A stretch of DNA of 15,540 bases, from positions 1 to 15,540 of the forward strand of contig NW_021825410.1 of NCBI RefSeq assembly GCF_006345805.1, written 5' to 3'. The first letter of the stretch is position 1. Each line of letters starts with the position of its first letter. This document shows positions 573 to 15,540 of this stretch, piece by piece. The translations under genes and the position numbers were made by a program. The notes beneath the pieces are model-generated. The model was not told the origin of the DNA and made no database searches. It saw only the letters and a program-made list of their open reading frames with translations. This DNA is from Octopus sinensis. Its lineage: Eukaryota.

Positions 573-1030
573 TGGTAAGAAGGGCGGCGAGCTGGCAGAG
601 TGGTTAGCAGGCCGGGCGAAATGCTCAGCGGTATTTCGTCTGCCGCTACGTTCTGAGTTCAAATTCCACCGAGGTCCACTTTGCCTTTCATCCTTTCGGG
701 GTCGATAAATTAAGTACCAGTTACGCACTGGGGTCGATGTAATCGACTTAATCCGTTTGTCTGTCCTTGTTTGTCCCCTCTGTGTTTAGCCCCTTGTGGG
801 TAATAAAGAAAATAAGAAGCTTGCTTCCCTACCTCATGGTTCCAGGTTCAGTCTCACTGCGCGGTACTTTGGCCAGCCTCGAGCTGACCAAAGCATTGTG
901 AGTGGATTTGGTAGATGGAAACTAAAAGAAGCCCGTCGAATATATATATATATATATACTGTGTATATATATATATATATATATACGGGAGCATGGCCGC
1001 AGTCACACGACCGAAACAAAGAAAACAAAA
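573..1030 (+). mobile_element. Second tRNA-derived SINE (family B), split by the family A insertion and internally deleted
   Basis: TGGTAAGAAG|CTTGCTTCCC head, B-box-like GGTTCAGTCTC (845-855), body GACCAAAGCATTGTGAGTGGATTTGGTAGATGGAAACT, (TA)n 940-985, tail AGCATGGCCGCAGTCA..GAAACAA (990-1030). Body is similar to 1985-2032 and 10335-10470. Confidence 0.75.
583..812 (+). mobile_element. Full-length tRNA-derived SINE (family A, Octopus-type) with 7-bp TSD TAAGAAG
   Basis: A box TGGCAGAGTGG (593-603), B box GTTCAAATTCC (657-667), core GCCTTTCATCCTTTCGGGGTCGATAAATTAAGTACCAG, A-rich tail TAATAAAGAAAA. TAAGAAG occurs at 576-582 and 813-819. Homologous copies lie at 4032-4457, 7584-8033 and 8929-9340. 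Confidence 0.92.
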
Positions 1031-1107
1031 ACCAAAAAAACAATGCCATTTTAATCCCGAGCAAGCCGGGGGTATCTTTGTATATCATATATATATATAT
1101 ATATATA

Positions 1108-1331
1108 CCGGAGAGTAGAACCCCATAAATGTGACAAGTGGAAAAAAAAGTACTCAAATACCAGTGGTAGAGTAATATGCTTTATTTAAAAAGCAGCCAG
1201 AAAAATTCAACAAAACCTGTTACTCTGAGTTTTCACGTTGCCGTTCATCGGACAGCAAAAACTGCTAGCAACGGGAAACTCAGAAGTAACAGGTTTTGTT
1301 GAATTTTCTGCTGCTTTAAATAAAAGTATAT
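1108..1331. mobile_element. Foldback non-autonomous element flanked by (TA)n, resembling an inverted Penelope-like pseudo-LTR
   Basis: About 65-bp inverted arms (1175-1241 and 1268-1331). (TA)n lies at 1086-1107 and 1332-1353. Contains a hammerhead motif. Confidence 0.65.
1217..1255 (-). ncRNA. Minimal type I hammerhead ribozyme (predicted)
   Basis: Minus strand: CTGT-CCGATGA-ACG(GCAA)CGT-GAAAA-CTC A GAG-TA-ACAG. Stem I is CTGT/ACAG, stem II is 3 bp with a GNRA loop, stem III is self-complementary, cleavage triplet GUA. Deviations are U4->C and one extra A. Confidence 0.7.
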
Positions 1332-1389
1332 CTATATATATATATATATATATAGGTCCGCCATATATAATGAATGAGGGAATCGAAGT

Positions 1390-2041: not shown

Positions 2042-2478
2042 TACATACATACATACATACATGCATACATAAATACATACACACATACATACATACATAC
2101 ATACATACATACATACATACATACATACATACATGCATACATACAAACATACATACAAACATACATACATAAAACATACAAACACACATACATACATACA
2201 TGCATTCATACATACATACATACATATACACACACATACATACATACATACATACATACATGCATTCATACATACATACATACATACATGCATTCATACA
2301 TACATACATGCATACATACATACATACATACACACACACACATACATACATACATACATGCATACATACATACATACATGCATACATACATACATGCATA
2401 CATACGTACATACATACATAAATACATACATTCATACATTCATTCATACATACATACACACATACATACATACATACG

Positions 2479-2507
<29 letters not shown>
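2042..2507. repeat. (TACA)n tetranucleotide array with CA/TGCA/TTCA variants
   Basis: Direct reading; source of the MYVC/HTYI ORFs. Confidence 0.97.
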
Positions 2508-2509
<2 letters not shown>

Positions 2510-3060: not shown

Positions 3061-4031
3061 TTTATTTATGTATATTTATATGAAATGATTTATATAAAGA
3101 TATCTGCTTTTCAAAGTAGTTTGTGAGAATATAGAGGAAAAAATGTCTTTGGGAAAAAAGTAAACTGATAAATTTAAGGCTATTTTGATCAGACCCCACT
3201 TTGTTGCTACCTTCTTAAATTACAGGCTTATCTGAATGCTTATGACAAATAAACAAAGCTTCAGTTGTCAAGTTTTAAAACTTATTTACTGCAGTTTGAG
3301 ATTTTTGTGTCTCGCCATCTTGTGTGTGAGTCGTCAGGAAATCTGGCAGACGTGTTCATCAAAGTTGTAGATCCGTGGAATAATTGTAAGAATCGGTTGC
3401 TGCTTTCGACTTGGCAGACTTCATAACTGGCTTCAGGGTCTCCTATAAATATGGTGTGTGGAAAATCGAGGTGAAAGTGGGAAAATAAGTTTGTTGTTAG
3501 TTAAGAAAAGCGGGTGGAATGAACAGACCTTTCAAAAGCTTATGATCTATGGAAGAAATTCGTTCAAGTAAAAGGGAGTTCTAGTTTGTGAAAAATTTCG
3601 TAGTTACTACGCTAAACCCACCTTTTATCACAAACATCAATTTGGGAGTCAATTTGGGGGTTGTTTTGACCCTAAAATTACTATAATTCTTTAGTTTTGT
3701 GAGTTTACTTCAGTTCATAGGGTTTTTTTTTCTTTTATATTCTGAAACTTGTTTCCTTAATCGAATTGCAGATCAGAATTTGTTGATTATCCTTAAACTA
3801 AGATCCTCCTCCAATTTCAGTAGTTCTGTTGTGACGGTTGTAAGGGATCTTGATCGAGTGGTTAAGATCTTGCAGCCCCTATTGTGAGTTTAATATTGTC
3901 TGGCATGGAACCGGTCAATAGTGCCAAAACAAAACTGGGGATCGATATTGTAAATCATTCCTCACGTTATTCGTTTGGATCATCGGGTCTTGCATCTTTT
4001 CCGTGTTTTACTTTGAGGAAAGGATCTATTC

Positions 4032-4217
4032 TTATTTCTTTATTGCCCAACAAGGGGCTAAACATATAGGGGACAAACAAGGACAGACAAACGGATTAAG
4101 TCGATTACATCGACCTCAGTGCGTAACTGGTACTTATTTAATCGACCCCGAAAGGATGAAAGGCAAAGTCGACCTCGGCGGAATTTGAACTAAGAACGTA
4201 ATGGCAGACGAAAAACC
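4032..4217 (-). mobile_element. Family A SINE lacking the first ~46 nt (right monomer of a dimer)
   Basis: Reverse complement of 629-812. Confidence 0.88.
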
Positions 4218-4457
4218 TATTTCTTTATTACCTACAAGGAGCTAAACACAGAGAGGACAAACAAGGACAGACATACTTGATTGTGTTTTTAAACCGGAAT
4301 AAATTTCATAATTATTTAAGAGATGTAACCAGAGATCCTACCCACCAACTGAATAAAAGTCGACCTCGGCGGAATTTGAACTCAGAACATAGCGGCAGAC
4401 GAAATACCGCTAAGAATTTTGCCCGGCATGCTAACGATTCTGCCAGCTCGCCGCCTT
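4218..4457 (-). mobile_element. Family A SINE (left monomer) with its middle replaced by an 82-bp inverted copy of flanking DNA
   Basis: Tail at 4218-4273 and head at 4359-4457 match the reverse complement of 583-812; 4278-4359 is foreign to the SINE. Confidence 0.85.
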
Positions 4458-5131: not shown

Positions 5132-5148
5132 TGGCGCCCTCTGGTGGA
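5132..5148 (-). promoter_or_regulatory. CTCF-binding motif
   Basis: Minus strand TCCACCAGAGGGCGCCA matches the CTCF core CCACCAG(G/A)GGGCGC. Confidence 0.5.
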
Positions 5149-6565
5149 ACGATGAATGCATTTCAAGCTAATTGGCTATCGTCAGCAGTGTGTTCCACAT
5201 GGGAGACAATCCTGAAATGATTCTCTAAGTCATAGTTTCCTTATAAACAATCAGTAAAAACTACGAATTGATTACGTATGACGCCAGCGAGGCTATTTTT
5301 GTTCGACTCGGATTTCGTACCCTGACACAGATTTGTGAGCAGACGATCATTCAGTGAACGATTTTAAATGGAGTTGATAATATTAGCTCTGTCTTCTATT
5401 GCCGTATTTAACGTATATATATATCGTCTGCATCCGTCTTTCTGTGAATAATTTGGGTGATTTTTCCTGCATCGGATAAGACAGGTTCTGCGCCAATCAC
5501 GAACGGTTTCTTTGATAGAATTTTGTCAAATTTCTTCCTACCACTCGACGTTTCTCAAATTTTCATCAGACTATTTTCAAAACTATGGAATAGATGTAGT
5601 TTTCCATGCTGACGACAAAAGTTGCATTCATTTCTTTTTCTAGAAGTCAACAATCAAAAGTTACATGCACGATATTTCATCCCTTTTGTTTTAGTTTGTT
5701 TTATTTTGTTTAAAGTAGTTATAGTATATTTTAATAAGATTTGGCAACTATTTCTAGGAAGTCGAGAGACTACATAGTTCGTGTTTGCTGTTGCCATGAA
5801 GCAAACAGTCACGACTTCTGCTATGTCTGGCAATGGCGGCTACCGATTGGCTAAAATTATATAACTTTAAATGCATTGCTGTGAAAAACGTTATATATTA
5901 TTTGCAAGGGGACTCCTTCATCGAAGACTGGTGCTTACCATGCGTTGACGAGAGGCAATTACCTTGAAACTATAGTCCGTATGTAGTACTTAGGTCTTCG
6001 AGGGAGGATGACCTCCCTTTTCAAATAACACAAGGGCACTGAGATAGTGTCTAAAGTCCATCTGGTGACGTTGATCGCCTGGGGCTAAATGCATCAGTAA
6101 CACCCCACCCCCAGTGGCTAGCCACATTCAGATGGCTAGTACACCTTACGTTTTTTATTATTAATTTCTAGAAAAAACAAAAAAAGATGAAAGCAATATT
6201 CATTATCAGAATGCTAAAACTACATTTTCTAAAATTTAATCTGGTTAAAATTTGAAAAACTTCAAGCGGATGAGAGAAATTTAACAAGATCCCTTAGTTT
6301 TAATATTGCGTTCCAAATAATTTTTCCGAAAACTTTAATTGCGAAATTAATCATGTTAAATTTCTAAAGAAAAAAAAAATAATAATAAATAAATTTGTAT
6401 TTTCTACAAGTCCCGTTACCTCAGTAAACTTGAAATATCTCAACAGAAAATAGTTTCAAACGTGACATTCCTTAACAAAAGATTGATTGCTCTATGAAAC
6501 TGCTTTCTGCAGTAAAGGGTAATAAATTTTTGAGTAATATATATATGTTCTCTGAAGTAGAAAGA

Positions 6566-6605
6566 ATTATTATTATTATTATTGTTGTTGTTGTTATTAT
6601 TGTTG

Positions 6606-6656
<51 letters not shown>

Positions 6657-6686
6657 ATTAGCATCATCATCATCATAATCATCATT

Positions 6687-6779
<93 letters not shown>

Positions 6780-6782
6780 TTA
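6566..6782. repeat. Compound (ATT)n/(GTT)n/(ATC)n trinucleotide array
   Basis: Direct reading. Confidence 0.97.
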
Positions 6783-6980
6783 TTTTTATAGCGTGCTTTC
6801 ACTTCACTACCGAGCGCAGCTCTGTGTGCCTTGGGTATGTGCTGTGATTTGTTGTGATGCTCTGATGGTTATTGTATGGAAAGTGTTCTGCGTAGGATGT
6901 GTGCAGTGCCTAGTAGTGCAATTTTCTGTATGTTATATGTGTTTGTAAGTCCTGGTGTTTTTGTTATGTATTTGTCTGAA
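6783..6980 (-). mobile_element. 5'-truncated 3' end of an R4/Dong-like (RLE-type) non-LTR retrotransposon with (TAA)n tail
   Basis: Minus 6979->6869 reads SDKYITKTPGLTNTYNIQKIALLGTAHILRRTLSIQ*. The QK..LLGTAHILR motif is typical of R4-clade C-termini. An ~85-nt UTR runs into AATAATAAT. Confidence 0.75.
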
Positions 6981-7464: not shown

Positions 7465-7480
7465 AATTATTATTATTATA

Positions 7481-7552
<72 letters not shown>

Positions 7553-7570
7553 CATTATTATTATTATTAT
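7465..7570. repeat. (ATT)n microsatellite
   Basis: Direct reading. Confidence 0.97.
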
Positions 7571-7583
7571 CAAGGCGGTGAAA

Positions 7584-7793
7584 GGCGGCGAGCAGACAGA
7601 ATCGTTAGCATGCTGGGCAAAATGCTTTTCAGCATTTCGTCTGTCTCACGTTCTGAGTTCAAATTCCGCTGAGGTCGACTTTGCCTCTTATCATTTCCGA
7701 GTGATAAATTAAGTACCAGTAGAACACTGGGGTTAATATGATCGACAATCCTCCCTCCCCTGAAATTTCAGTCCTCGTAGAAAGGGTTATTAT
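7584..7793 (+). mobile_element. Diverged family A-related SINE (alternative tail)
   Basis: GGCGGCGAGC head, GAGTTCAAATTCC B box, GATAAATTAAGTACCAG core, tail GAAATTTCAG..GTAGAAAGGGTTATTAT. Confidence 0.85.
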
Positions 7794-7796
7794 AAA

Positions 7797-8033
7797 GGTG
7801 GCGAGCGGGCAAAATCGTTAGCAAACCGGACAAATTGCTTGGCGACATTTCGTTCAGCTCTTTACTTCCTAAGTTCAAATTCCGCCGAGGTCGACTTTGC
7901 TTCTTCAGCCTTTCCGGGGTCGATAAAATGCACACCAGTTTGAGCCCTGGTGTCGATTTAATCGACTAGATACCCCCACCACCAACACCACCACAAAATT
8001 TCAGACTTCATACCTTTAGTAAAACGATTTATT
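7797..8033 (+). mobile_element. Second diverged family A-related SINE, head-to-tail with the previous copy
   Basis: GGTGGCGAGC head, AGTTCAAATTCCGCCGAGGTCGACTTTGC, tail AAAATTTCAG..TAGTAAAACGATTTATTAT. Confidence 0.82.
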
Positions 8034-8394: not shown

Positions 8395-8427
<33 letters not shown>

Positions 8428-8431
<4 letters not shown>

Positions 8432-8641
8432 TCGCCATGTTGATTCGCTAGCTTCTGCACGCATTTTTTTTCTCTCCTTGTTTCACTCCGTGTTTCTTTT
8501 CTGTGTATCTTTCTGTTGAAGAGCGTAGGCTCGAAACGTAAAAGACTTGTTTTATTTATATTCCTGAGCGCCATACTAATACAATTGTTTGTTTGTATTC
8601 CACCTGCCTTCGTCTTTTGTTTATTTTCATAAAGCTTCCCG

Positions 8642-8642
<1 letters not shown>
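8428..8642 (+). mobile_element. ~215-bp non-autonomous element flanked by (TA)n, resembling a Penelope-like pseudo-LTR
   Basis: (TA)n at 8398-8427 and 8643-8672; central hammerhead motif. Confidence 0.6.
8508..8545 (+). ncRNA. Minimal type I hammerhead ribozyme variant (predicted)
   Basis: TCTTT-CTGTTGA-A-GAGC(GTAG)GCTC-GAAA-CG-TA-AAAGA: 5-bp stem I, 4-bp stem II, loopless palindromic ACGT stem III, GUA site. Deviations are A6->U and one inserted A. Confidence 0.65.
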
Positions 8643-8674
<32 letters not shown>

Positions 8675-8928: not shown

Positions 8929-9098
8929 TACTTTTCTACTCGAGGCACAAGGCTGAAAATTTTCAGGGAGGGGTGGGGCAGTCGATTAGATCGGCCCCAG
9001 TACGCAACTGATAATTAATTTATCGACCCCGAAATTATGAAAGGTAAAGTCGACCTCGGCGGAATTTGAACTCAGAATGTAAAGACAGATAAAATACA
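8929..9098 (-). mobile_element. Family A-related SINE lacking the first ~46 nt, alternative tail (right monomer)
   Basis: Shares the B box and core with family A; tail resembles 7755-7793 and 7995-8033. Confidence 0.85.
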
Positions 9099-9340
9099 TA
9101 TTTCTTTACTACCCACAAGGGGCTAAACACAGAGAGGACAAACAAGGACAGACAAACGGATTAAGTGGAATATATCGATCACCAGTGCATTAAATTAAAT
9201 AACTAGTACTTAATTTATCGACCCCGAAAGGATGAAAGGCGAGGTCGACCTCGGCGGAATTTGAACTCAGAACGTAGCGGCAGACGAAATACCGCTAAGC
9301 ATTTCGCCCGGCGTGCTAACCACTCTGCCAGTTCGCTGCC
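9099..9340 (-). mobile_element. Full-length family A SINE (left monomer)
   Basis: Reverse complement of 583-812 with a ~10-bp AT-rich insertion near 9190. Confidence 0.92.
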
Positions 9341-9360
9341 TTGCAAATGTGTATATATAT

Positions 9361-9508: not shown

Positions 9509-10058
9509 ATACATACATGCATCATGCGTACATACATACATACATACATTCATACATACGTACATACATACATACATGCATACATACATGCACGCATACA
9601 TACATACATACATACATTACATACATACATACATACATACACACCACCCTACCATACACCACCAACACATACATACATACACACACATACCATACACACA
9701 TACACACAAACATACATACATACAACATACATACACACACACACATACATACATACATACATACATACATACACCACACACATAACATACATACATACTA
9801 CATACATACACACACAATACATACATACATACATACATACATACATACATACATTCATACATACATTCATACATACATACATACATACATTCATACATTC
9901 ATTCATACATACATACATACATGCATACATACATACACACACACACACATACATACATTCAAACATACATACATACATACACACATACATACATACATAC
10001 ATACATACATACACACATACATACATACATACATACATACATACGTACATACATACAT
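9509..10058. repeat. (TACA)n array with degenerate CA-rich segment
   Basis: Direct reading. Confidence 0.95.
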
Positions 10059-10334
10059 ATATTGCTCATTCTTGGTCTCATCACCGAAGCAAATCTAATT
10101 CGCTGGCTGAGATCATCGAATAATCCCACAGCATGATCGATATCCTTTTACCATTTACCCCCAAAGACAAGTTCCACTCCTCTAACCTCATTTCTATATT
10201 CCACACCTCAAACCACCCGCCACCGCATCACCCTTCCACATGCCCCCCAAACCCCAGTTGATTAAATTAATTGGAGTTATCTCCCTTGTTTGTCAAGAAT
10301 TTTTTTTTTCTCTTTGTTAAAGATAGATGTCGTT

Positions 10335-11040
10335 GTAGTTGTGTGGCTCCCCCAGCAATGTGGTCTTGGGTTCAGTCCCCCTGTGAGGCACCTTGGGCAA
10401 GTGTCTTCTACTGTGGCCCCCAAACCACGTGGCTAGGTTTGAGAGACGGAAACTGAAAGGAAGCCAGTCGTGTGTATGTGTGTGTTGTATATAAATATAT
10501 ACGTATGTATGTATATCAATATGCATATATATATGTGTGGTGTTTTGTGTGTGTGTGTGTGTATGTTGTTGTGTGCGTGCGTGTATAGTGTATATATATA
10601 TATATAATATTATATATAATATATATATATTATATATATATATATATTATATATATATATGTATATATGATATATATATTACATAGATATGCGTTTATAT
10701 ATGTGATGTGTGGAGCGTATTTGTATGTGTGTATATATATGTATATTATATATATTTATATATCTACACGTGTGTGTGTGTGTGTATACTTACTTATGTG
10801 CGTATGTATATACGTGTGTGCCGTTGTGTTTGTAGCGCGATCATCGCTTGACAAACTTGTGTCGGTTTGTTTACGCCCCTGTAAACTTAACATTTCCCCC
10901 CACCCCACCCCACCCCACCCCACCCCACCCAAGAGATCGACGACAGAATAAGTACTGAGTGGGGTGGGGTGTTGGGTGTCAGTGTCGGGGGTAGGTGGGG
11001 GCCGATTCATTCAACAAAAACCCTTCGAGGCGGCTTACCC
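10335..11040 (+). mobile_element. Diverged family B SINE with expanded internal microsatellite (10471-10820)
   Basis: GGGTTCAGTCCCCCTGTGAGGCACCTTGGGCAAGTGTCTTCTACT ... GAGACGGAAACTGAAAGGAAGCC. The 3' half (CATCGCTTGACAA...AGAATAAGTACT...GGCGG) is assigned partly from a recalled consensus. Confidence 0.6.
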
Positions 11041-11474
11041 CCGCCCCAATATACCCCGCAATGAAACGAGTAACAGAGCAAAACTAAAAGCTAAAAAAAA
11101 ATAGACAGGAGAGATATAACCCAAAGGAAGTTTTCGTTTACTAATTACTCGCATGAATTTCAGCAAATCGAATCCTTTCGGCTCATGTACAGGTGATGTG
11201 GGACCCTAAGGTATTTCCTTCCTCCCACATTTAACCAATCTGCGAGAGACTACCCGCCCACGCCGCCCTAATCATCCTCATATGTTTGTATGTTGTTCGT
11301 CTGTTTTTGTCCAATGGTTTGGCAGACGACCAACTTAACACTCGTATTAACATATGGTTTCTGCTTTGTGGTTTCTGCTTCCACCCACACCTTTTCTTCT
11401 TCTTCTATTTTCATCTGTCTTCATCATCTTTAATCTATTTGGGGTATCTTTTCTTTTATTTTTTCTCGTTTGAA

Positions 11475-11619
11475 TCATCGTCGTCGTCGTCGCCGTCGCC
11501 ACTATCAACGCCATCGTCTTCATCTAGATCATCATCATAACCATCATCGTCATCATCTTAACCATTATTATCATCATCATAACTATCATCATCATAGCCA
11601 TCATCATTATCATCATAAC

Positions 11620-11692
<73 letters not shown>

Positions 11693-12010
11693 GTCACCAG
11701 CGTCATCGTCGTCGTCGTCATCATCACCATCATCGCTGTCACCGTCACCACCACCACCACAGCTGCCGTCTCTTCAGCAACGCCACCATTACAACACTCG
11801 CCCATACTATTATCATCCACACAGCCATCACTACCACCACCACCGCCACAACCACCTCTATTACCAGCACTCCCTTCTCAACCACCACCAACACTACCAC
11901 CACCATCATCACCACCACTACCACCACCACCACCATCACATCAAATACCAGCACCACCGCCGTCAGACCCCTCCACTACCTCTCCCACTACGACCACCAC
12001 TACTAACCAC
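11475..12010. repeat. (CAT)n/(CGT)n/(CAC)n trinucleotide array
   Basis: Direct reading; source of the poly-His ORF. Confidence 0.95.
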
Positions 12011-12131
12011 AATACCATAACCTACACCACAATTAGAACTAAACAGAAATCGCAGTCAAGTTCTCCTCCCTCGCATCACAGTTTCAAAAATAAAGAAGAC
12101 AAGGAAAGAACGGATCTGGAATAAGAAGTTT

Positions 12132-12838
12132 GGCTTAGAAGGATGGCTACGGTTGGAACGTCATTGACCAGGGGGGGGGTGATCTGGAGTAAACAATAAC
12201 GCCAAATATATCATCATCATCATCATCATCATAACATCACCACCAATACCATCGCCGCCATCTTCACCACCACCACCACCACAAACGTTACAATTGTAGC
12301 CCCCCCTACCTCCTCCCTTCCCTCGGCTTCCATCTCTTCTCCTCCTCCTCCTCCACCACCACCTCCTCCCTTTCATAAACTATATTTTAACTTGAAGGTC
12401 ATGTGACACATATATACAGTACAACTCTTTCTTTCTTTTCTTCTCTCTGTCAACATTTGGGACACGTCTCCAATCCCCCCCTCCACCCTCACCTCTCCAC
12501 ACCAACACTCGCCAACCTCCCACCACCAATCCCCCCATCCCTCGACACCAACACTATTATCACACCTGCTACTACTACTCGTAAAGTTTAGATGGCCATG
12601 GTCGGAACGCCATTGACCACAGGTCTGCCTGACCGGGCTAAACAACAATAATACCGAAATCACCACCACCACCACCGTTTCACCACCACCATCACATCCA
12701 TCACTATCACCATCATTATCATCATCACAACCACCACCACCACCGCCATCACCACCACCACTACCACCACCACCACCGTACCACCACCATTACTACTACT
12801 ACTACTACTACCAATACTATAACTACTACTACCCCTAT

Positions 12839-12871
<33 letters not shown>

Positions 12872-13520
12872 CACTACTACTACTATTACTACTACTCGCA
12901 AGTTTAGGTGGCCATGGTTGGAACGCCATTGACTATAGGTCTTCTTGACCGCGCTTGACAGCAATAACACACAAACCATCACCACCCCCACCATCATCAC
13001 CCCCCCCCACCACCATCACCGTCACCACCACTACTGCTACTACTGGTCGCAACTGTTGTCCAAACACTGCAACACTAACACCAACTTCAACGCGATTAGT
13101 ACCACTACTATAGTCACAACAACTACTACTATCGCATGTACCACCACCACTGTTACTACTACTACTACTATTACTACTACTACTACTACCACTACTACTA
13201 CCACTACTATTACTACCACTACTACACCAGCACTAACTACAAAATGACCACTACTTTAGCTGTAACGCCACTACCAGTACTACTACACAAAACACACCAC
13301 TACATACAATACCAATACTAGTATTACCAATATTAGTATTACAGTAGTAACACCATAACAGTACAAATGCTGCTGTATCAACACCAGCACCACTACCACA
13401 ACTGCAAGACACATACCACTACGACAACACCCGTTACTACATTACAAGAGCCATGGCGCACCGTCGCCGTCGCCGTCGCCGCATCTGGCTTCGAGAAGAT
13501 GGCCGTCGGAACGCGTCATC
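12132..13520 (+). repeat. Three to four copies of a ~70-bp core separated by (CAC)n/(CAT)n/(CTA)n arrays
   Basis: Cores at 12132-12200, 12579-12652, 12895-12967 and partially 13487-13520 share GATGGCCATGGT(C/T)GGAACGCCATTGAC..AGGTCT....GACC...CTAAACAACAATAA. Confidence 0.8.
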
Positions 13521-13559: not shown

Positions 13560-14599
13560 ATGAGAGGAGATTGGAGGAGTTGTGTAGGGGGGATTGGGTA
13601 GAGGAGAAGGAATAGAGAGGGAATGATGGAAAGTGAGAGGGGAGGAGAGAGAGAGATGAGAGTGTGAGGGAGAGAGATGGAGATGGAGAGAGAAAGAAAT
13701 AGCGGGAGAGAGAAGTAGCAGGAAAGAGTGTGAACGAGTGAGAGGGAAAGAGAGAGAGCGAGAGAAAGAAATAGCGGGAAAGAGAGTAAGGTAGAGAGAT
13801 GGAAAGAGAAATAGTGGGGGAAAGAGTGTGTGAGAGAGAGAGAGAGAGAAGTAGAGAGAAAGAGTGTGAATGGATAAGAGGGAAAGAGAAAGAGCGAGAG
13901 AAAGAAGTAGCGGGAAAGAGAGTGTGTGAACGAGTGAGAGGGAGAGAGAGAAAGAGAGTAAGGAGAGAGATGGAAAGAGAAATAGCGGGGGAGAGAGTGT
14001 GAGAGAGAGAGAGAGAGAGAAGTAGAAAGAAAGGGAGTGAGGGAGAAAAGAGTGAATGAGAGAGATGGAGAGATACAGAGGGAGAGAGAGAGAAAGAAAA
14101 GGTGTGAATGAGAGAGATGGAGAGAGAAATAATGGCAGAAAGAGGGAGAAAGTGAGCAAGAAAGATGGAGAGAGAAATAGAGCGAGGTAGAGTGAACGAA
14201 AGAGAGGGAGAGACAGATGGAAATAAAGGAAGTGAGAGAGGGAGTAAATGGGAGGGGGAGACTGTGTGGGAAGAAATGCAACAGTAAGTGTTAGTGAAAG
14301 CAAACAGAAGCAAGTGTTAAGAGGGAGGCAGAGGGAGAAAGAGCGTAAGGCAGAGTGGATTATTCGATAGAAACAGGGTGAAAGAGAGAGGGTGAGGGAG
14401 AAAAGGAGAAAGAAAGAAATAGAGATAGAGAGGTAAGAGGAAGGCACGGAGGATGATGAAAGACATGTGTGAGAGAGGGAGGAGGTTGAATAGTAATAGT
14501 GGGAGTTGGTGAAAAAGAGAGAGAAACAGAATAAATTGGAAGAGAGAGTGTTCAATGGATACAATGAGAAAGACAGACTGAAAGATAGAGGGGAAGGAG

Positions 14600-14650
<51 letters not shown>

Positions 14651-14868
14651 CAGACGACAGATAGATATTAGATAGAGAGAGAAAAGGAGAGAGTAATATG
14701 TGAGAGGCAGTGAGAGACAGAAATAGCAGAAGCCGAGAGAGATTATGGAAGCAGAGAAGGGATAGAAAATAGTAATATATGAAAGGATGAAATAGATATA
14801 ATATAGCGAGGCAAAAGATGGATGGAGAGAGGAGGGGGAGAAACGAGTAAAAACAGAGGCAGAGGGAA

Positions 14869-14911
<43 letters not shown>

Positions 14912-14920
14912 GAGGCACTG
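13560..14920. repeat. ~1.35-kb GA-rich polypurine tract with an internal ~172-bp higher-order repeat
   Basis: GAGAGTAAGG..AGAGATGGAAAGAGAAATAG recurs at 13782 and 13954. Confidence 0.9.
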
Positions 14921-15204
14921 AGTCACATAATAAGAATAGAATGAGAGGGAGTCGGGTTGTGCATGTTGTGTGGATAGAAATTAAAGAAAAATATAAAAAA
15001 GAATAAGAAATTGTTGGTGTTGCTGTTGTTGTTGTTGTTCTTTATAAACCTTCAGTAGGTCATCTTTAATTGACCAGACAGACCCATCTATCTATAGATA
15101 TATATATAGTACTTACGTACTATGTATATTCGTATAGATAGACAGGTCTATCAGACAGACTATAGGATATCTATACATCTATGGTTTAGAATTAGAATAG
15201 TAAG

Positions 15205-15540
<336 letters not shown>

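What the first reader, a model, noticed from the sequence alone, without database searches (positions are those of the whole stretch)
1108..1331. Hammerhead ribozyme inside a (TA)n-embedded foldback element
Seen: the minus strand 1255->1217 folds as a type I hammerhead: stem I CTGT/ACAG, core CCGATGA...GAAAA, stem II ACG-GCAA-CGT, stem III CTC-A-GAG (1-nt loop, needs a dimer), GUA site between 1221 and 1220. The opposite arm (1268-1293, +) carries the 3' half GCAACGGGAAACTCAGAAGTAACAG, so combining the arms gives canonical GAAACTCAGAGTA. Known: Penelope-like elements carry minimal hammerheads with palindromic stem III that cleave as dimers, and often have inverted pseudo-LTRs. Inference: a short non-autonomous ribozyme-bearing retroelement (retrozyme-like); a transcript would also form a ~65-bp hairpin.
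Basis: partly seen in the sequence, partly recalled or inferred. Interest (0 to 1): 0.85.

Follow-up and report, generated by a model that had tools for sequence, protein, structure and literature searches.

The report
Decayed hammerhead-like retroelement stub in (TA)n
The foldback is real, but it is most likely the dead remnant of a Penelope-like retroelement insertion (two truncated tail copies joined head to head inside a TA microsatellite) carrying a damaged hammerhead-like motif, which is an ordinary kind of genomic debris in invertebrates.

Summary
The sequence facts hold. A 157-bp foldback (arms 1175-1241 and 1268-1331) sits between two (TA)n arrays, and the minus strand 1255->1217 can be drawn as a type I hammerhead. 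The motif is degenerate: C replaces U4 (CCGAUGA) and there is an extra A after GAA. It is not the predicted fold, and the long hairpin beats it by about 35 kcal/mol. Rfam finds no hammerhead, though it also misses better motifs in the window. Alone the motif is marginal (about 0.05-0.075 chance hits per shuffled window).

Context makes an origin from a real ribozyme plausible. The descriptor built for it found two cleaner minimal-hammerhead motifs elsewhere (expected 0.025), and a related exact-core one lies nearby. Two of three loci lie between TA arrays (P about 8e-4).

Both arms are the same 3'-terminal segment, truncated at different points and joined head to head, with a one-sided extension. 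That matches published Penelope-like element (PLE) insertions. There are no tandem repeats and only one complete motif, so it is not a retrozyme. No family copies, RT or endonuclease were found, so the PLE assignment is inferred (about 0.6). A SINE-like repeat points to an octopus-like cephalopod. Interest is low.

The parts
1087..1107 (.). Left (TA)n array, the presumed half of the target microsatellite
   Evidence: Sequence; perfect TA run found.
1108..1174 (-). 67-bp unique stretch between the left (TA)n and the left arm. It has no counterpart beyond the right arm. It may be a one-sided 3' extension ('tail') of the minus-strand copy, or pre-existing DNA.
   Evidence: Not included in the gapped arm alignment. 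No other copy in the window. Published PLE tails are 30-40 bp, so the fit is only partial.
1175..1267 (-). Longer 5'-truncated copy (93 nt, read on the minus strand). Its 3' end faces left and ends in AAATAAAGCATAT. It contains the only complete hammerhead-like motif.
   Evidence: Arm alignment. The central 26 nt (1242-1267) continue this copy beyond the point where the other copy stops.
1217..1255 (-). Degenerate type I hammerhead-like motif: helix I CUGU/ACAG, core CCGAUGA (C at U4), helix II ACG-GCAA-CGU, GAA plus an extra A, near-palindromic helix III ACUC-A-GAGU, and the putative site after GUA (1221|1220).
   Evidence: the only hit on this strand, 1 mismatch plus 1 insertion. Chance estimate. 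Energetics. Rfam negative.
1268..1331 (+). Shorter 5'-truncated copy (64 nt, plus strand). It starts inside helix II loop/3' strand (GCAACGG), carries GAAAC but has an extra A in helix III (CTCAGAAGTA), and ends in AAATAAAAGTATAT directly against (TA)n.
   Evidence: It differs from the other copy by 2 substitutions and 6 homopolymer-run indels.
1333..1354 (.). Right (TA)n array

Best explanation
This is a dead insertion remnant of a Penelope-like retroelement (PLE), or of an RNA mobilised by one.

Inferred mechanism:
1. A GIY-YIG endonuclease cut both strands of an AT-rich (TA)n target.
2. Reverse transcription was primed on both 3'-OH ends from the 3' region of the element RNA.
3. Both cDNAs stopped early, after about 93 and 64 nt.
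4. The two stubs were joined head to head, giving a foldback whose 3' ends face outward into the microsatellite. One side possibly carries the optional tail.

The 3' region of such elements carries a minimal hammerhead with a palindromic helix III. The copy here retains that motif in damaged form (C at U4, GAAAA for GAAA) and is very unlikely to self-cleave. The locus has no present function beyond being a hairpin-forming repeat.

Shown: the foldback, its asymmetry, the TA flanks, the motif and its defects, and the enrichment of similar motifs in the window.

Inferred: PLE parentage, the dual-strand priming event, and that the ancestral motif was a working ribozyme.
For: 1. Both arms are the same segment with different inner end points and outward-facing ends that share AAATAAA(G/A). 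The junction is at 1267/1268.
2. The insert lies between TA arrays.
3. [quoted passage not shown]
4. A purified PLE protein cleaves and extends both DNA strands at AT-rich sites with internal RT initiation (PMC11167929).
5. Minimal PLE hammerheads have a short helix I and a palindromic helix III. They occur mostly as single truncated copies or as pairs on opposite strands 100-700 bp apart (PMC4209133).
6. The descriptor written for this motif also found plus 5941-5981 and plus 8509-8544, each with only one core mismatch. The expectation was 0.025, and none of 200 shuffles had two or more hits.
7. A related exact-core motif lies at minus 5198->5140, with a compensatory G-C/C-G change in helix II relative to 5941-5981. 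A second descriptor gave P(>=3 hits) = 0.003.
8. Two of the three motif loci sit between TA arrays (P about 8e-4).
9. The other arm has canonical GAAAC, so the extra A is a change in one copy or an assembly error.
10. The window is probably cephalopod. PLEs are an annotated TE order in Octopus vulgaris (PMC13282606).
Against: - No RT or GIY-YIG coding remnant is in the window: no convincing ORFs and no Pfam hit in the ten most complex stop-free segments.
- No other copy of the family could be retrieved, so consensus, covariation and a link to an autonomous parent are all untested.
- The motif is marginal on its own. It lacks two traits reported for PLE minimal hammerheads: an unpaired base after A9 and a G10.1-C11.1 pair.
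- The one-sided extension is 67 bp, not 30-40.
- The clade for which (TA)n targeting is best documented (Naiad) lacks canonical hammerheads.
- TA arrays are frequent in this neighbourhood.
Confidence: 0.6

Rival explanations
1. A miniature foldback DNA transposon (MITE-like, for example Tc1/mariner-derived with TA target duplication). Its long terminal inverted repeats make up almost the whole element. The hammerhead resemblance is coincidental.
For: - The near-complete palindrome is 157 bp, AT-rich and TA-flanked.
- The motif alone is near chance level.
- MITEs and Tc1-Mariner elements are annotated in octopus genomes.
Against: - The arm termini (ATATGCTTTATTT...) are not, to my knowledge, Tc1/mariner-like, and no clear duplication can be read in TA-rich flanks.
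- There is no second copy in the window.
- It does not explain the enrichment of hammerhead-like motifs or their association with TA arrays.
- It does not explain why both arms end in an AATAAA-containing tail facing outward.
Confidence: 0.15
2. A local inverted duplication of ordinary intergenic sequence, made by fold-back template switching or repair at an unstable microsatellite. No mobile element is involved and the hammerhead resemblance is chance.
For: - The region 940-1445 is a patchwork of TA arrays and short unique pieces.
- There is a single copy in the window and no copies elsewhere.
Against: - Same as for the MITE rival: the motif enrichment and TA association.
- The close match to published PLE insertion anatomy.
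Confidence: 0.1
3. One reading: a discrete, short, non-autonomous ribozyme-bearing retroelement (retrozyme-like). Its hammerhead is active as a dimer and processes its transcripts.
For: - Palindrome-like helix III. Two copies of the 53-nt RNA are predicted to pair through ACUCAGAGU.
- Animal retrozymes are proposed to be non-autonomous PLE derivatives (bioRxiv 10.64898/2026.07.22.740005).
- If the homopolymer indels are assembly errors, only the U4-to-C change remains.
Against: - There are no tandem direct repeats and only one complete motif, so no unit-length RNA can be released. Metazoan retrozymes are 170-400-bp tandem units each carrying a hammerhead (PMC7229834).
- U4 is part of the invariant core (my knowledge of hammerhead mutagenesis).
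- The hammerhead conformer is about 35 kcal/mol less stable than the hairpin.
- Rfam is negative.
Confidence: 0.07

Closest known systems
Minimal hammerheads in pseudo-LTRs and truncated copies of Penelope-like elements (Cervera and de la Pena 2014, PMC4209133)
   Same: Type I layout, a short helix I (4 bp), a palindromic helix III that implies dimer action, a position near the element's 3' end, occurrence as isolated truncated copies or as pairs on opposite strands, and high sequence heterogeneity.
   Different: - The core has C at U4 and an extra A before A15.1.
- Helix II is only 3 bp (published: 6-8 bp).
- There is no unpaired base after A9.
- 10.1-11.1 is A-U, not G-C.
- No family consensus or covariation is available.
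PLE insertion architecture: 5'-truncated copies, adjacent inverted copy, one-sided tail, microsatellite targets (Craig et al. 2021, PMC8557442; PAc in vitro study 2024, PMC11167929)
   Same: Head-to-head inverted copies of the same 3' segment, strong 5' truncation, a (TA)n target, and an extension on one side only. Dual-strand cleavage and extension give a mechanism for the foldback.
   Different: - Both copies are extremely short (93 and 64 nt), with no ORF-bearing copy between or beside them.
- The extension is 67 bp rather than 30-40.
- (TA)n bias is documented mainly for Naiads, which lack canonical hammerheads, and was hypothesised for Neptune.
Metazoan non-LTR retrozymes (Cervera and de la Pena 2020, PMC7229834; Li et al. 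2026 preprint)
   Same: AT-rich, short, hammerhead-bearing, and probably PLE-related.
   Different: Retrozymes are tandem direct repeats of 170-400 bp with a hammerhead in every unit, and they give circular RNAs. Here there is an inverted pair with one complete motif and no tandem unit.
LINE-1 twin priming (my knowledge)
   Same: Two cDNAs primed from both target strands and joined, giving an inversion.
   Different: Twin priming joins different, adjacent parts of the RNA. Here both arms are the same 3'-terminal part, which gives a palindrome.
MITEs / foldback DNA transposons
   Same: A small AT-rich palindromic unit with TA at the borders and a stable hairpin.
   Different: No recognisable transposase-family termini, no readable target duplication, an asymmetric centre that continues one arm, and a hammerhead-like motif.

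Membership tests
Hammerhead ribozyme, type I (Rfam Hammerhead_1 and relatives; PLE minimal variant) | Invariant 5' core C3-U4-G5-A6-N7-G8-A9 | tested here: not met
   The sequence is CCGAUGA, with C at position 4.
Hammerhead ribozyme, type I (Rfam Hammerhead_1 and relatives; PLE minimal variant) | G12-A13-A14 directly followed by the A15.1-U16.1 pair, then H17 | tested here: inconclusive
   The left arm has GAAAA-CUC, one extra A. The right arm has GAAA-CUC. The difference is a homopolymer length, which may be an assembly error. H17 = A is met.
Hammerhead ribozyme, type I (Rfam Hammerhead_1 and relatives; PLE minimal variant) | Three helices around the core, adopted by the RNA | tested here: not met
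   The helices can be drawn (4, 3 and 4 bp) but are not predicted. The isolated MFE is a different hairpin. The drawn fold is -1.0 versus -4.2 kcal/mol. In the foldback transcript the hammerhead conformer is -39.2 versus -74.7.
Hammerhead ribozyme, type I (Rfam Hammerhead_1 and relatives; PLE minimal variant) | Match to a curated covariance model | tested here: not met
   No hammerhead family at gathering score or at E <= 10. Control: the cleaner motifs at 5140-5198, 5939-5983 and 8508-8545 are also missed, so this test has little power for minimal variants.
Hammerhead ribozyme, type I (Rfam Hammerhead_1 and relatives; PLE minimal variant) | Conservation and compensatory changes across copies; self-cleavage | not testable with these tools
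   No copies were retrieved from any collection.
Penelope-like element insertion | RT plus GIY-YIG endonuclease ORF in the element or in a family member | tested here: not met
   No such ORF in the window. No Pfam hits for the ten most complex stop-free segments. A parent elsewhere in the genome could not be searched.
Penelope-like element insertion | 5'-truncated copies with an adjacent inverted 5'-truncated copy (inverted pseudo-LTR structure) | tested here: met
   Two copies of the same 3' segment lie head to head, with inner ends at 1267 and 1268 and outer ends at 1175 and 1331. Compared with the description in PMC8557442.
Penelope-like element insertion | Insertion bias for microsatellites such as (TA)n | tested here: met
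   TA arrays abut the insert. A second hammerhead-like locus (8430-8642) is also between TA arrays, P about 8e-4.
Penelope-like element insertion | Optional 30-40-bp tail at one end | tested here: inconclusive
   A one-sided 67-bp stretch (1108-1174) exists, but it is longer than published tails and cannot be shown to belong to the element.
Metazoan non-LTR retrozyme | Tandem direct repeats of about 170-400 bp, each with a type I hammerhead | tested here: not met
   No direct repeat of the unit. One complete motif only.
MITE / foldback DNA transposon | Constant termini with target-site duplication and many uniform copies | tested here: inconclusive
   A duplication is unreadable in TA-rich flanks. 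No second copy in the window. The source genome is not searchable.

The most novel reading that the evidence does not exclude
The locus belongs to an undescribed cephalopod family of very short, (TA)n-targeting elements mobilised by PLE machinery. Its hammerhead tolerates C at position 4 and works only as a trans-dimer or with protein assistance. The foldback would then be a functional form, for example a hairpin RNA source, rather than debris.
Probability: 0.05. Interest if true: 0.5.

Novelty: new member of a known kind. Interest (0 to 1): 0.2.

Why it matters
If the reading is right, this is one more fossil of a well-described process: PLE insertions with minimal hammerheads littering invertebrate genomes. 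It has little consequence by itself.

Its modest value is as a compact example of dual-strand priming. Both cDNAs aborted within 100 nt inside a palindromic (TA)n target. It also hints that cephalopod genomes carry several minimal-hammerhead families associated with TA microsatellites. That could be surveyed genome-wide to ask whether hammerhead-bearing PLE clades, and not only Naiads, target (TA)n.

Tried and rejected
1. Rfam at gathering score and at E <= 10 found no hammerhead. The only hits were hairpin-shaped chance matches (Plastid-psbJ-4, Phe_leader, miRNAs). I rejected Rfam as a decisive test after it also missed the cleaner motifs.
2. Family copies:
   - The 22-mer and a gapped core pattern gave 0 hits in viral contigs.
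   - A 20-mer in JGI metagenomes gave 12 hits, all with unrelated flanks.
   - A 19-mer in GTDB genomes gave 25 prokaryotic hits with flank identity at background level.
   - Translations of both arms against the 5.8-billion protein set gave no candidate.
   - Sampling of this genome's non-coding DNA there is sparse. Even the abundant SINE-like repeat gave only 8 hits, so absence says little about copy number.
3. Exact look-up of ten window ORFs: none is in the collection.
4. My first guess of a penaeid shrimp source, made from microsatellite richness, was dropped. The SINE-like repeat matched an Octopus bimaculoides protein.
5. A long inverted repeat between the 5140-5198 and 5939-5983 loci: only about 24 nt around the motif are similar, and the low-stringency alignment of the flanks was noise.
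6. tRNA scan of the window: nothing.
7. Pre-miRNA reading of the hairpin: only weak sub-threshold Rfam matches, 18-21 bits against gathering scores of 50 to 55.4 bits.
8. I ran no further search on a vertebrate PLE ORF. Octopus hits would be buried under vertebrate ones.

Full report
**What is in the sequence**

- On the minus strand, 1255->1217 reads CTGT CCGATGA ACG GCAA CGT GAAAA CTC A GAG TA ACAG. GUA ends at 1221.
- On the plus strand the other arm reads GCAACGGGAAACTCAGAAGTAACAG.
- Perfect TA runs lie at 1087-1107 and 1333-1354.
- A gapped alignment puts the arms at 1175-1241 and 1268-1331 with 26 nt between them.
- As RNA the region folds into one long hairpin: -74.7 kcal/mol, z = -10.8, and none of 200 shuffles fold as well.
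- The 67 bp at 1108-1174 are not part of the inverted repeat and have no counterpart on the right.

**Is it a hammerhead?**

Only on paper, and imperfectly.
- The core reads CCGAUGA where CUGANGA is invariant.
- An extra A separates G12-A13-A14 from the A15.1-U16.1 pair.
- Helix II has 3 bp closed by A-U rather than G-C. Helix I has 4 bp. Helix III closes on a single base, so it could only exist between two molecules.
- The drawn structure is worth -1.0 kcal/mol, against -4.2 for a competing fold.
- The isolated RNA folds no better than shuffles and prefers a UGCUGU/ACGGCA hairpin.
- Within a transcript of the whole locus, the hammerhead conformer is 35.5 kcal/mol less stable than the hairpin, which sequesters its 3' half.
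- Rfam reports no hammerhead at gathering score or at E <= 10. It also misses the cleaner motifs described below, so that negative carries little weight for minimal variants.

Taken alone, the motif is marginal.

**What the context adds**

The descriptor written for this motif returned two further loci I had not looked for:
- Plus 5941-5981 has U for C3 and a palindromic helix III, ACUAUAGU.
- Plus 8509-8544 has U for A6, an unpaired A after A9, G10.1-C11.1 and a palindromic ACGU.

Each has one core mismatch. The expectation was 0.025, and no shuffle in 200 had two hits.

The first of these shares 24 nt at 87.5% identity with an inverted partner about 750 bp away.
- That partner (minus 5198->5140) has an exact CUGACGA...GAAA core, a palindromic AUGCAU and a 2+7-bp helix I.
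- It carries a compensatory G-C to C-G change in helix II.
- Its U.U at the base of helix II has a published precedent in axolotl.
- A second, looser descriptor gave one exact-core and two one-mismatch hits, with P(>=3) = 0.003. That descriptor was tuned after I had seen the partner.

For these three motifs the predicted fold keeps helices I and II.

The 8508-8545 motif also sits in a roughly 213-bp insert between two TA arrays. Two of three independent loci being so flanked has P about 8e-4.

**Anatomy of the foldback**

- Read outward from the centre, both arms are the same sequence. Each ends in AAATAAA(G/A)(C)ATAT.
- The minus-strand copy runs 93 nt (1267->1175) and contains the whole motif.
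- The plus-strand copy runs 64 nt (1268->1331) and starts inside helix II.
- So these are two copies of one 3'-terminal segment, truncated at different 5' points and joined head to head.
- The copies differ by 2 substitutions and 6 indel events, every one a homopolymer-length change.
- That ratio is unlike neutral decay and suggests residual long-read assembly errors. The extra A in GAAAA, absent from the other arm, may not be real. The C at U4 lies in the part only one copy retains and cannot be cross-checked.

**Source organism and surroundings**

- The window is microsatellite-rich non-coding DNA with no credible ORF or Pfam domain.
- A roughly 240-bp SINE-like repeat occurs at least seven times.
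- Its translation matches an annotated Octopus bimaculoides protein at 78% identity, plus a few Logan and ENA ORFs.
- I infer a cephalopod, probably an octopus relative. This is a single named hit, not proof.
- PLEs are an annotated TE order in Octopus vulgaris (PMC13282606).

**Comparison with what is known**

- PLE insertions are strongly 5'-truncated.
  - They often have an inverted 5'-truncated copy adjacent, forming inverted repeats.
  - They may carry a 30-40-bp tail at one end only.
  - They prefer microsatellites such as (TA)n.
  - They carry hammerhead motifs near their 3' ends (PMC8557442).
- Their minimal hammerheads have a short helix I and a palindromic helix III. They are thought to act as dimers and cleave poorly in vitro. 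They are found mostly as isolated truncated copies or as pairs on opposite strands (PMC4209133).
- A purified PLE protein cleaves and extends both strands at AT-rich DNA and starts reverse transcription internally. That explains the tail (PMC11167929).
- Metazoan retrozymes, by contrast, are tandem 170-400-bp units with a hammerhead in each (PMC7229834). A 2026 preprint argues they are non-autonomous PLE derivatives.

**Most likely mechanism (inferred)**

1. A PLE endonuclease nicked both strands of the palindromic (TA)n target.
2. Each 3'-OH primed cDNA synthesis on the 3' region of an element RNA.
3. Both syntheses aborted within 100 nt, and repair joined the two stubs head to head.
4. One side may have started at the downstream initiation site and so kept an extension. 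At 67 bp that stretch is longer than published tails, and it may instead be older DNA.

The hammerhead came along as part of the 3' region and has no role at this locus. With C at U4, one complete copy and the hairpin competing, self-cleavage is very unlikely. I put this reading at about 0.6.

**Rivals**

- A MITE-like foldback transposon (0.15).
- A local inverted duplication at an unstable microsatellite (0.1).

The first two do not explain the enrichment of hammerhead-like motifs and their TA association. The third fails the tandem-repeat test and the core test.

**Limits**

- No other copy of the arm sequence could be retrieved from viral, metagenomic, prokaryotic or protein collections.
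- Consensus, covariation and a physical link to an RT/GIY-YIG parent therefore remain untested.
- No eukaryotic genome collection was searchable by DNA.

**Verdict**

The feature is a new member of a known kind (PLE-type hammerhead-bearing insertion debris) and of low interest. A genome-wide survey of the source species would settle it quickly.

Noticed in passing
window 5140-5198 (minus strand): The best hammerhead-like motif in the window. It has an exact core CUGACGA...GAAA, U.U at the base of a 3-bp helix II, a palindromic helix III (AUGCAU), U17, and helix I of 2 bp plus an internal loop plus 7 bp (GUGGAAC/GUUCCAC). The predicted fold keeps helices I and II. Rfam does not detect it.
   Followed up: partly
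window 5939-5983 (plus strand): A hammerhead-like motif with U at C3, helix II GAGG/CCUU, a palindromic helix III (ACUAUAGU), a 6-bp helix I and C17. It shares 24 nt (87.5%) with the inverted motif at 5161-5184, including a compensatory G-C/C-G change. The two face away from each other about 750 bp apart, like published dual PLE hammerheads.
   Followed up: partly
window 8430-8642, motif at 8508-8545 (plus strand): A roughly 213-bp insert between (AT)n 8399-8427 and (TA)n 8643-8671. It carries a minimal-hammerhead layout (unpaired A after A9, G10.1-C11.1, GUAG loop, palindromic ACGU, 5-bp helix I) but has U at A6. It looks like a second, unrelated truncated PLE-type tail in a TA microsatellite.
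   Followed up: partly
window 579-818, 4029-4273, 4356-4457, 7579-7746, 7794-7967, 8980-9154, 9099-9345: A dispersed, partly tandem SINE-like repeat of about 240 bp with 77-94% identity between copies. No tRNA-like head was found by ARAGORN. Its translation matches an Octopus bimaculoides annotated protein and Logan/ENA ORFs, suggesting a cephalopod source.
   Followed up: partly
window 1175-1331: All six indel differences between the two arms are homopolymer-length changes, against only two substitutions. This may reflect uncorrected long-read homopolymer errors in the assembly, which would affect any base-level reading in this window.
   Followed up: no
window 2042-2508, 9509-10059, 6566-6789, 7466-7570, 13600-14920, 15203-15540: Very long microsatellite and low-complexity arrays: (TACA)n and (ATAC)n of about 470-550 bp, (ATT)n, a roughly 1.3-kb GA-rich block with 52-56-bp higher-order periodicity, and (AGAT)n running off the end.
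   Followed up: no
window 11000-13500: A strongly strand-asymmetric block (GC skew down to -0.6) of CAT/CAC/TAC triplet arrays. It gives long His/Thr-rich pseudo-ORFs and shows no sign of coding.
   Followed up: no
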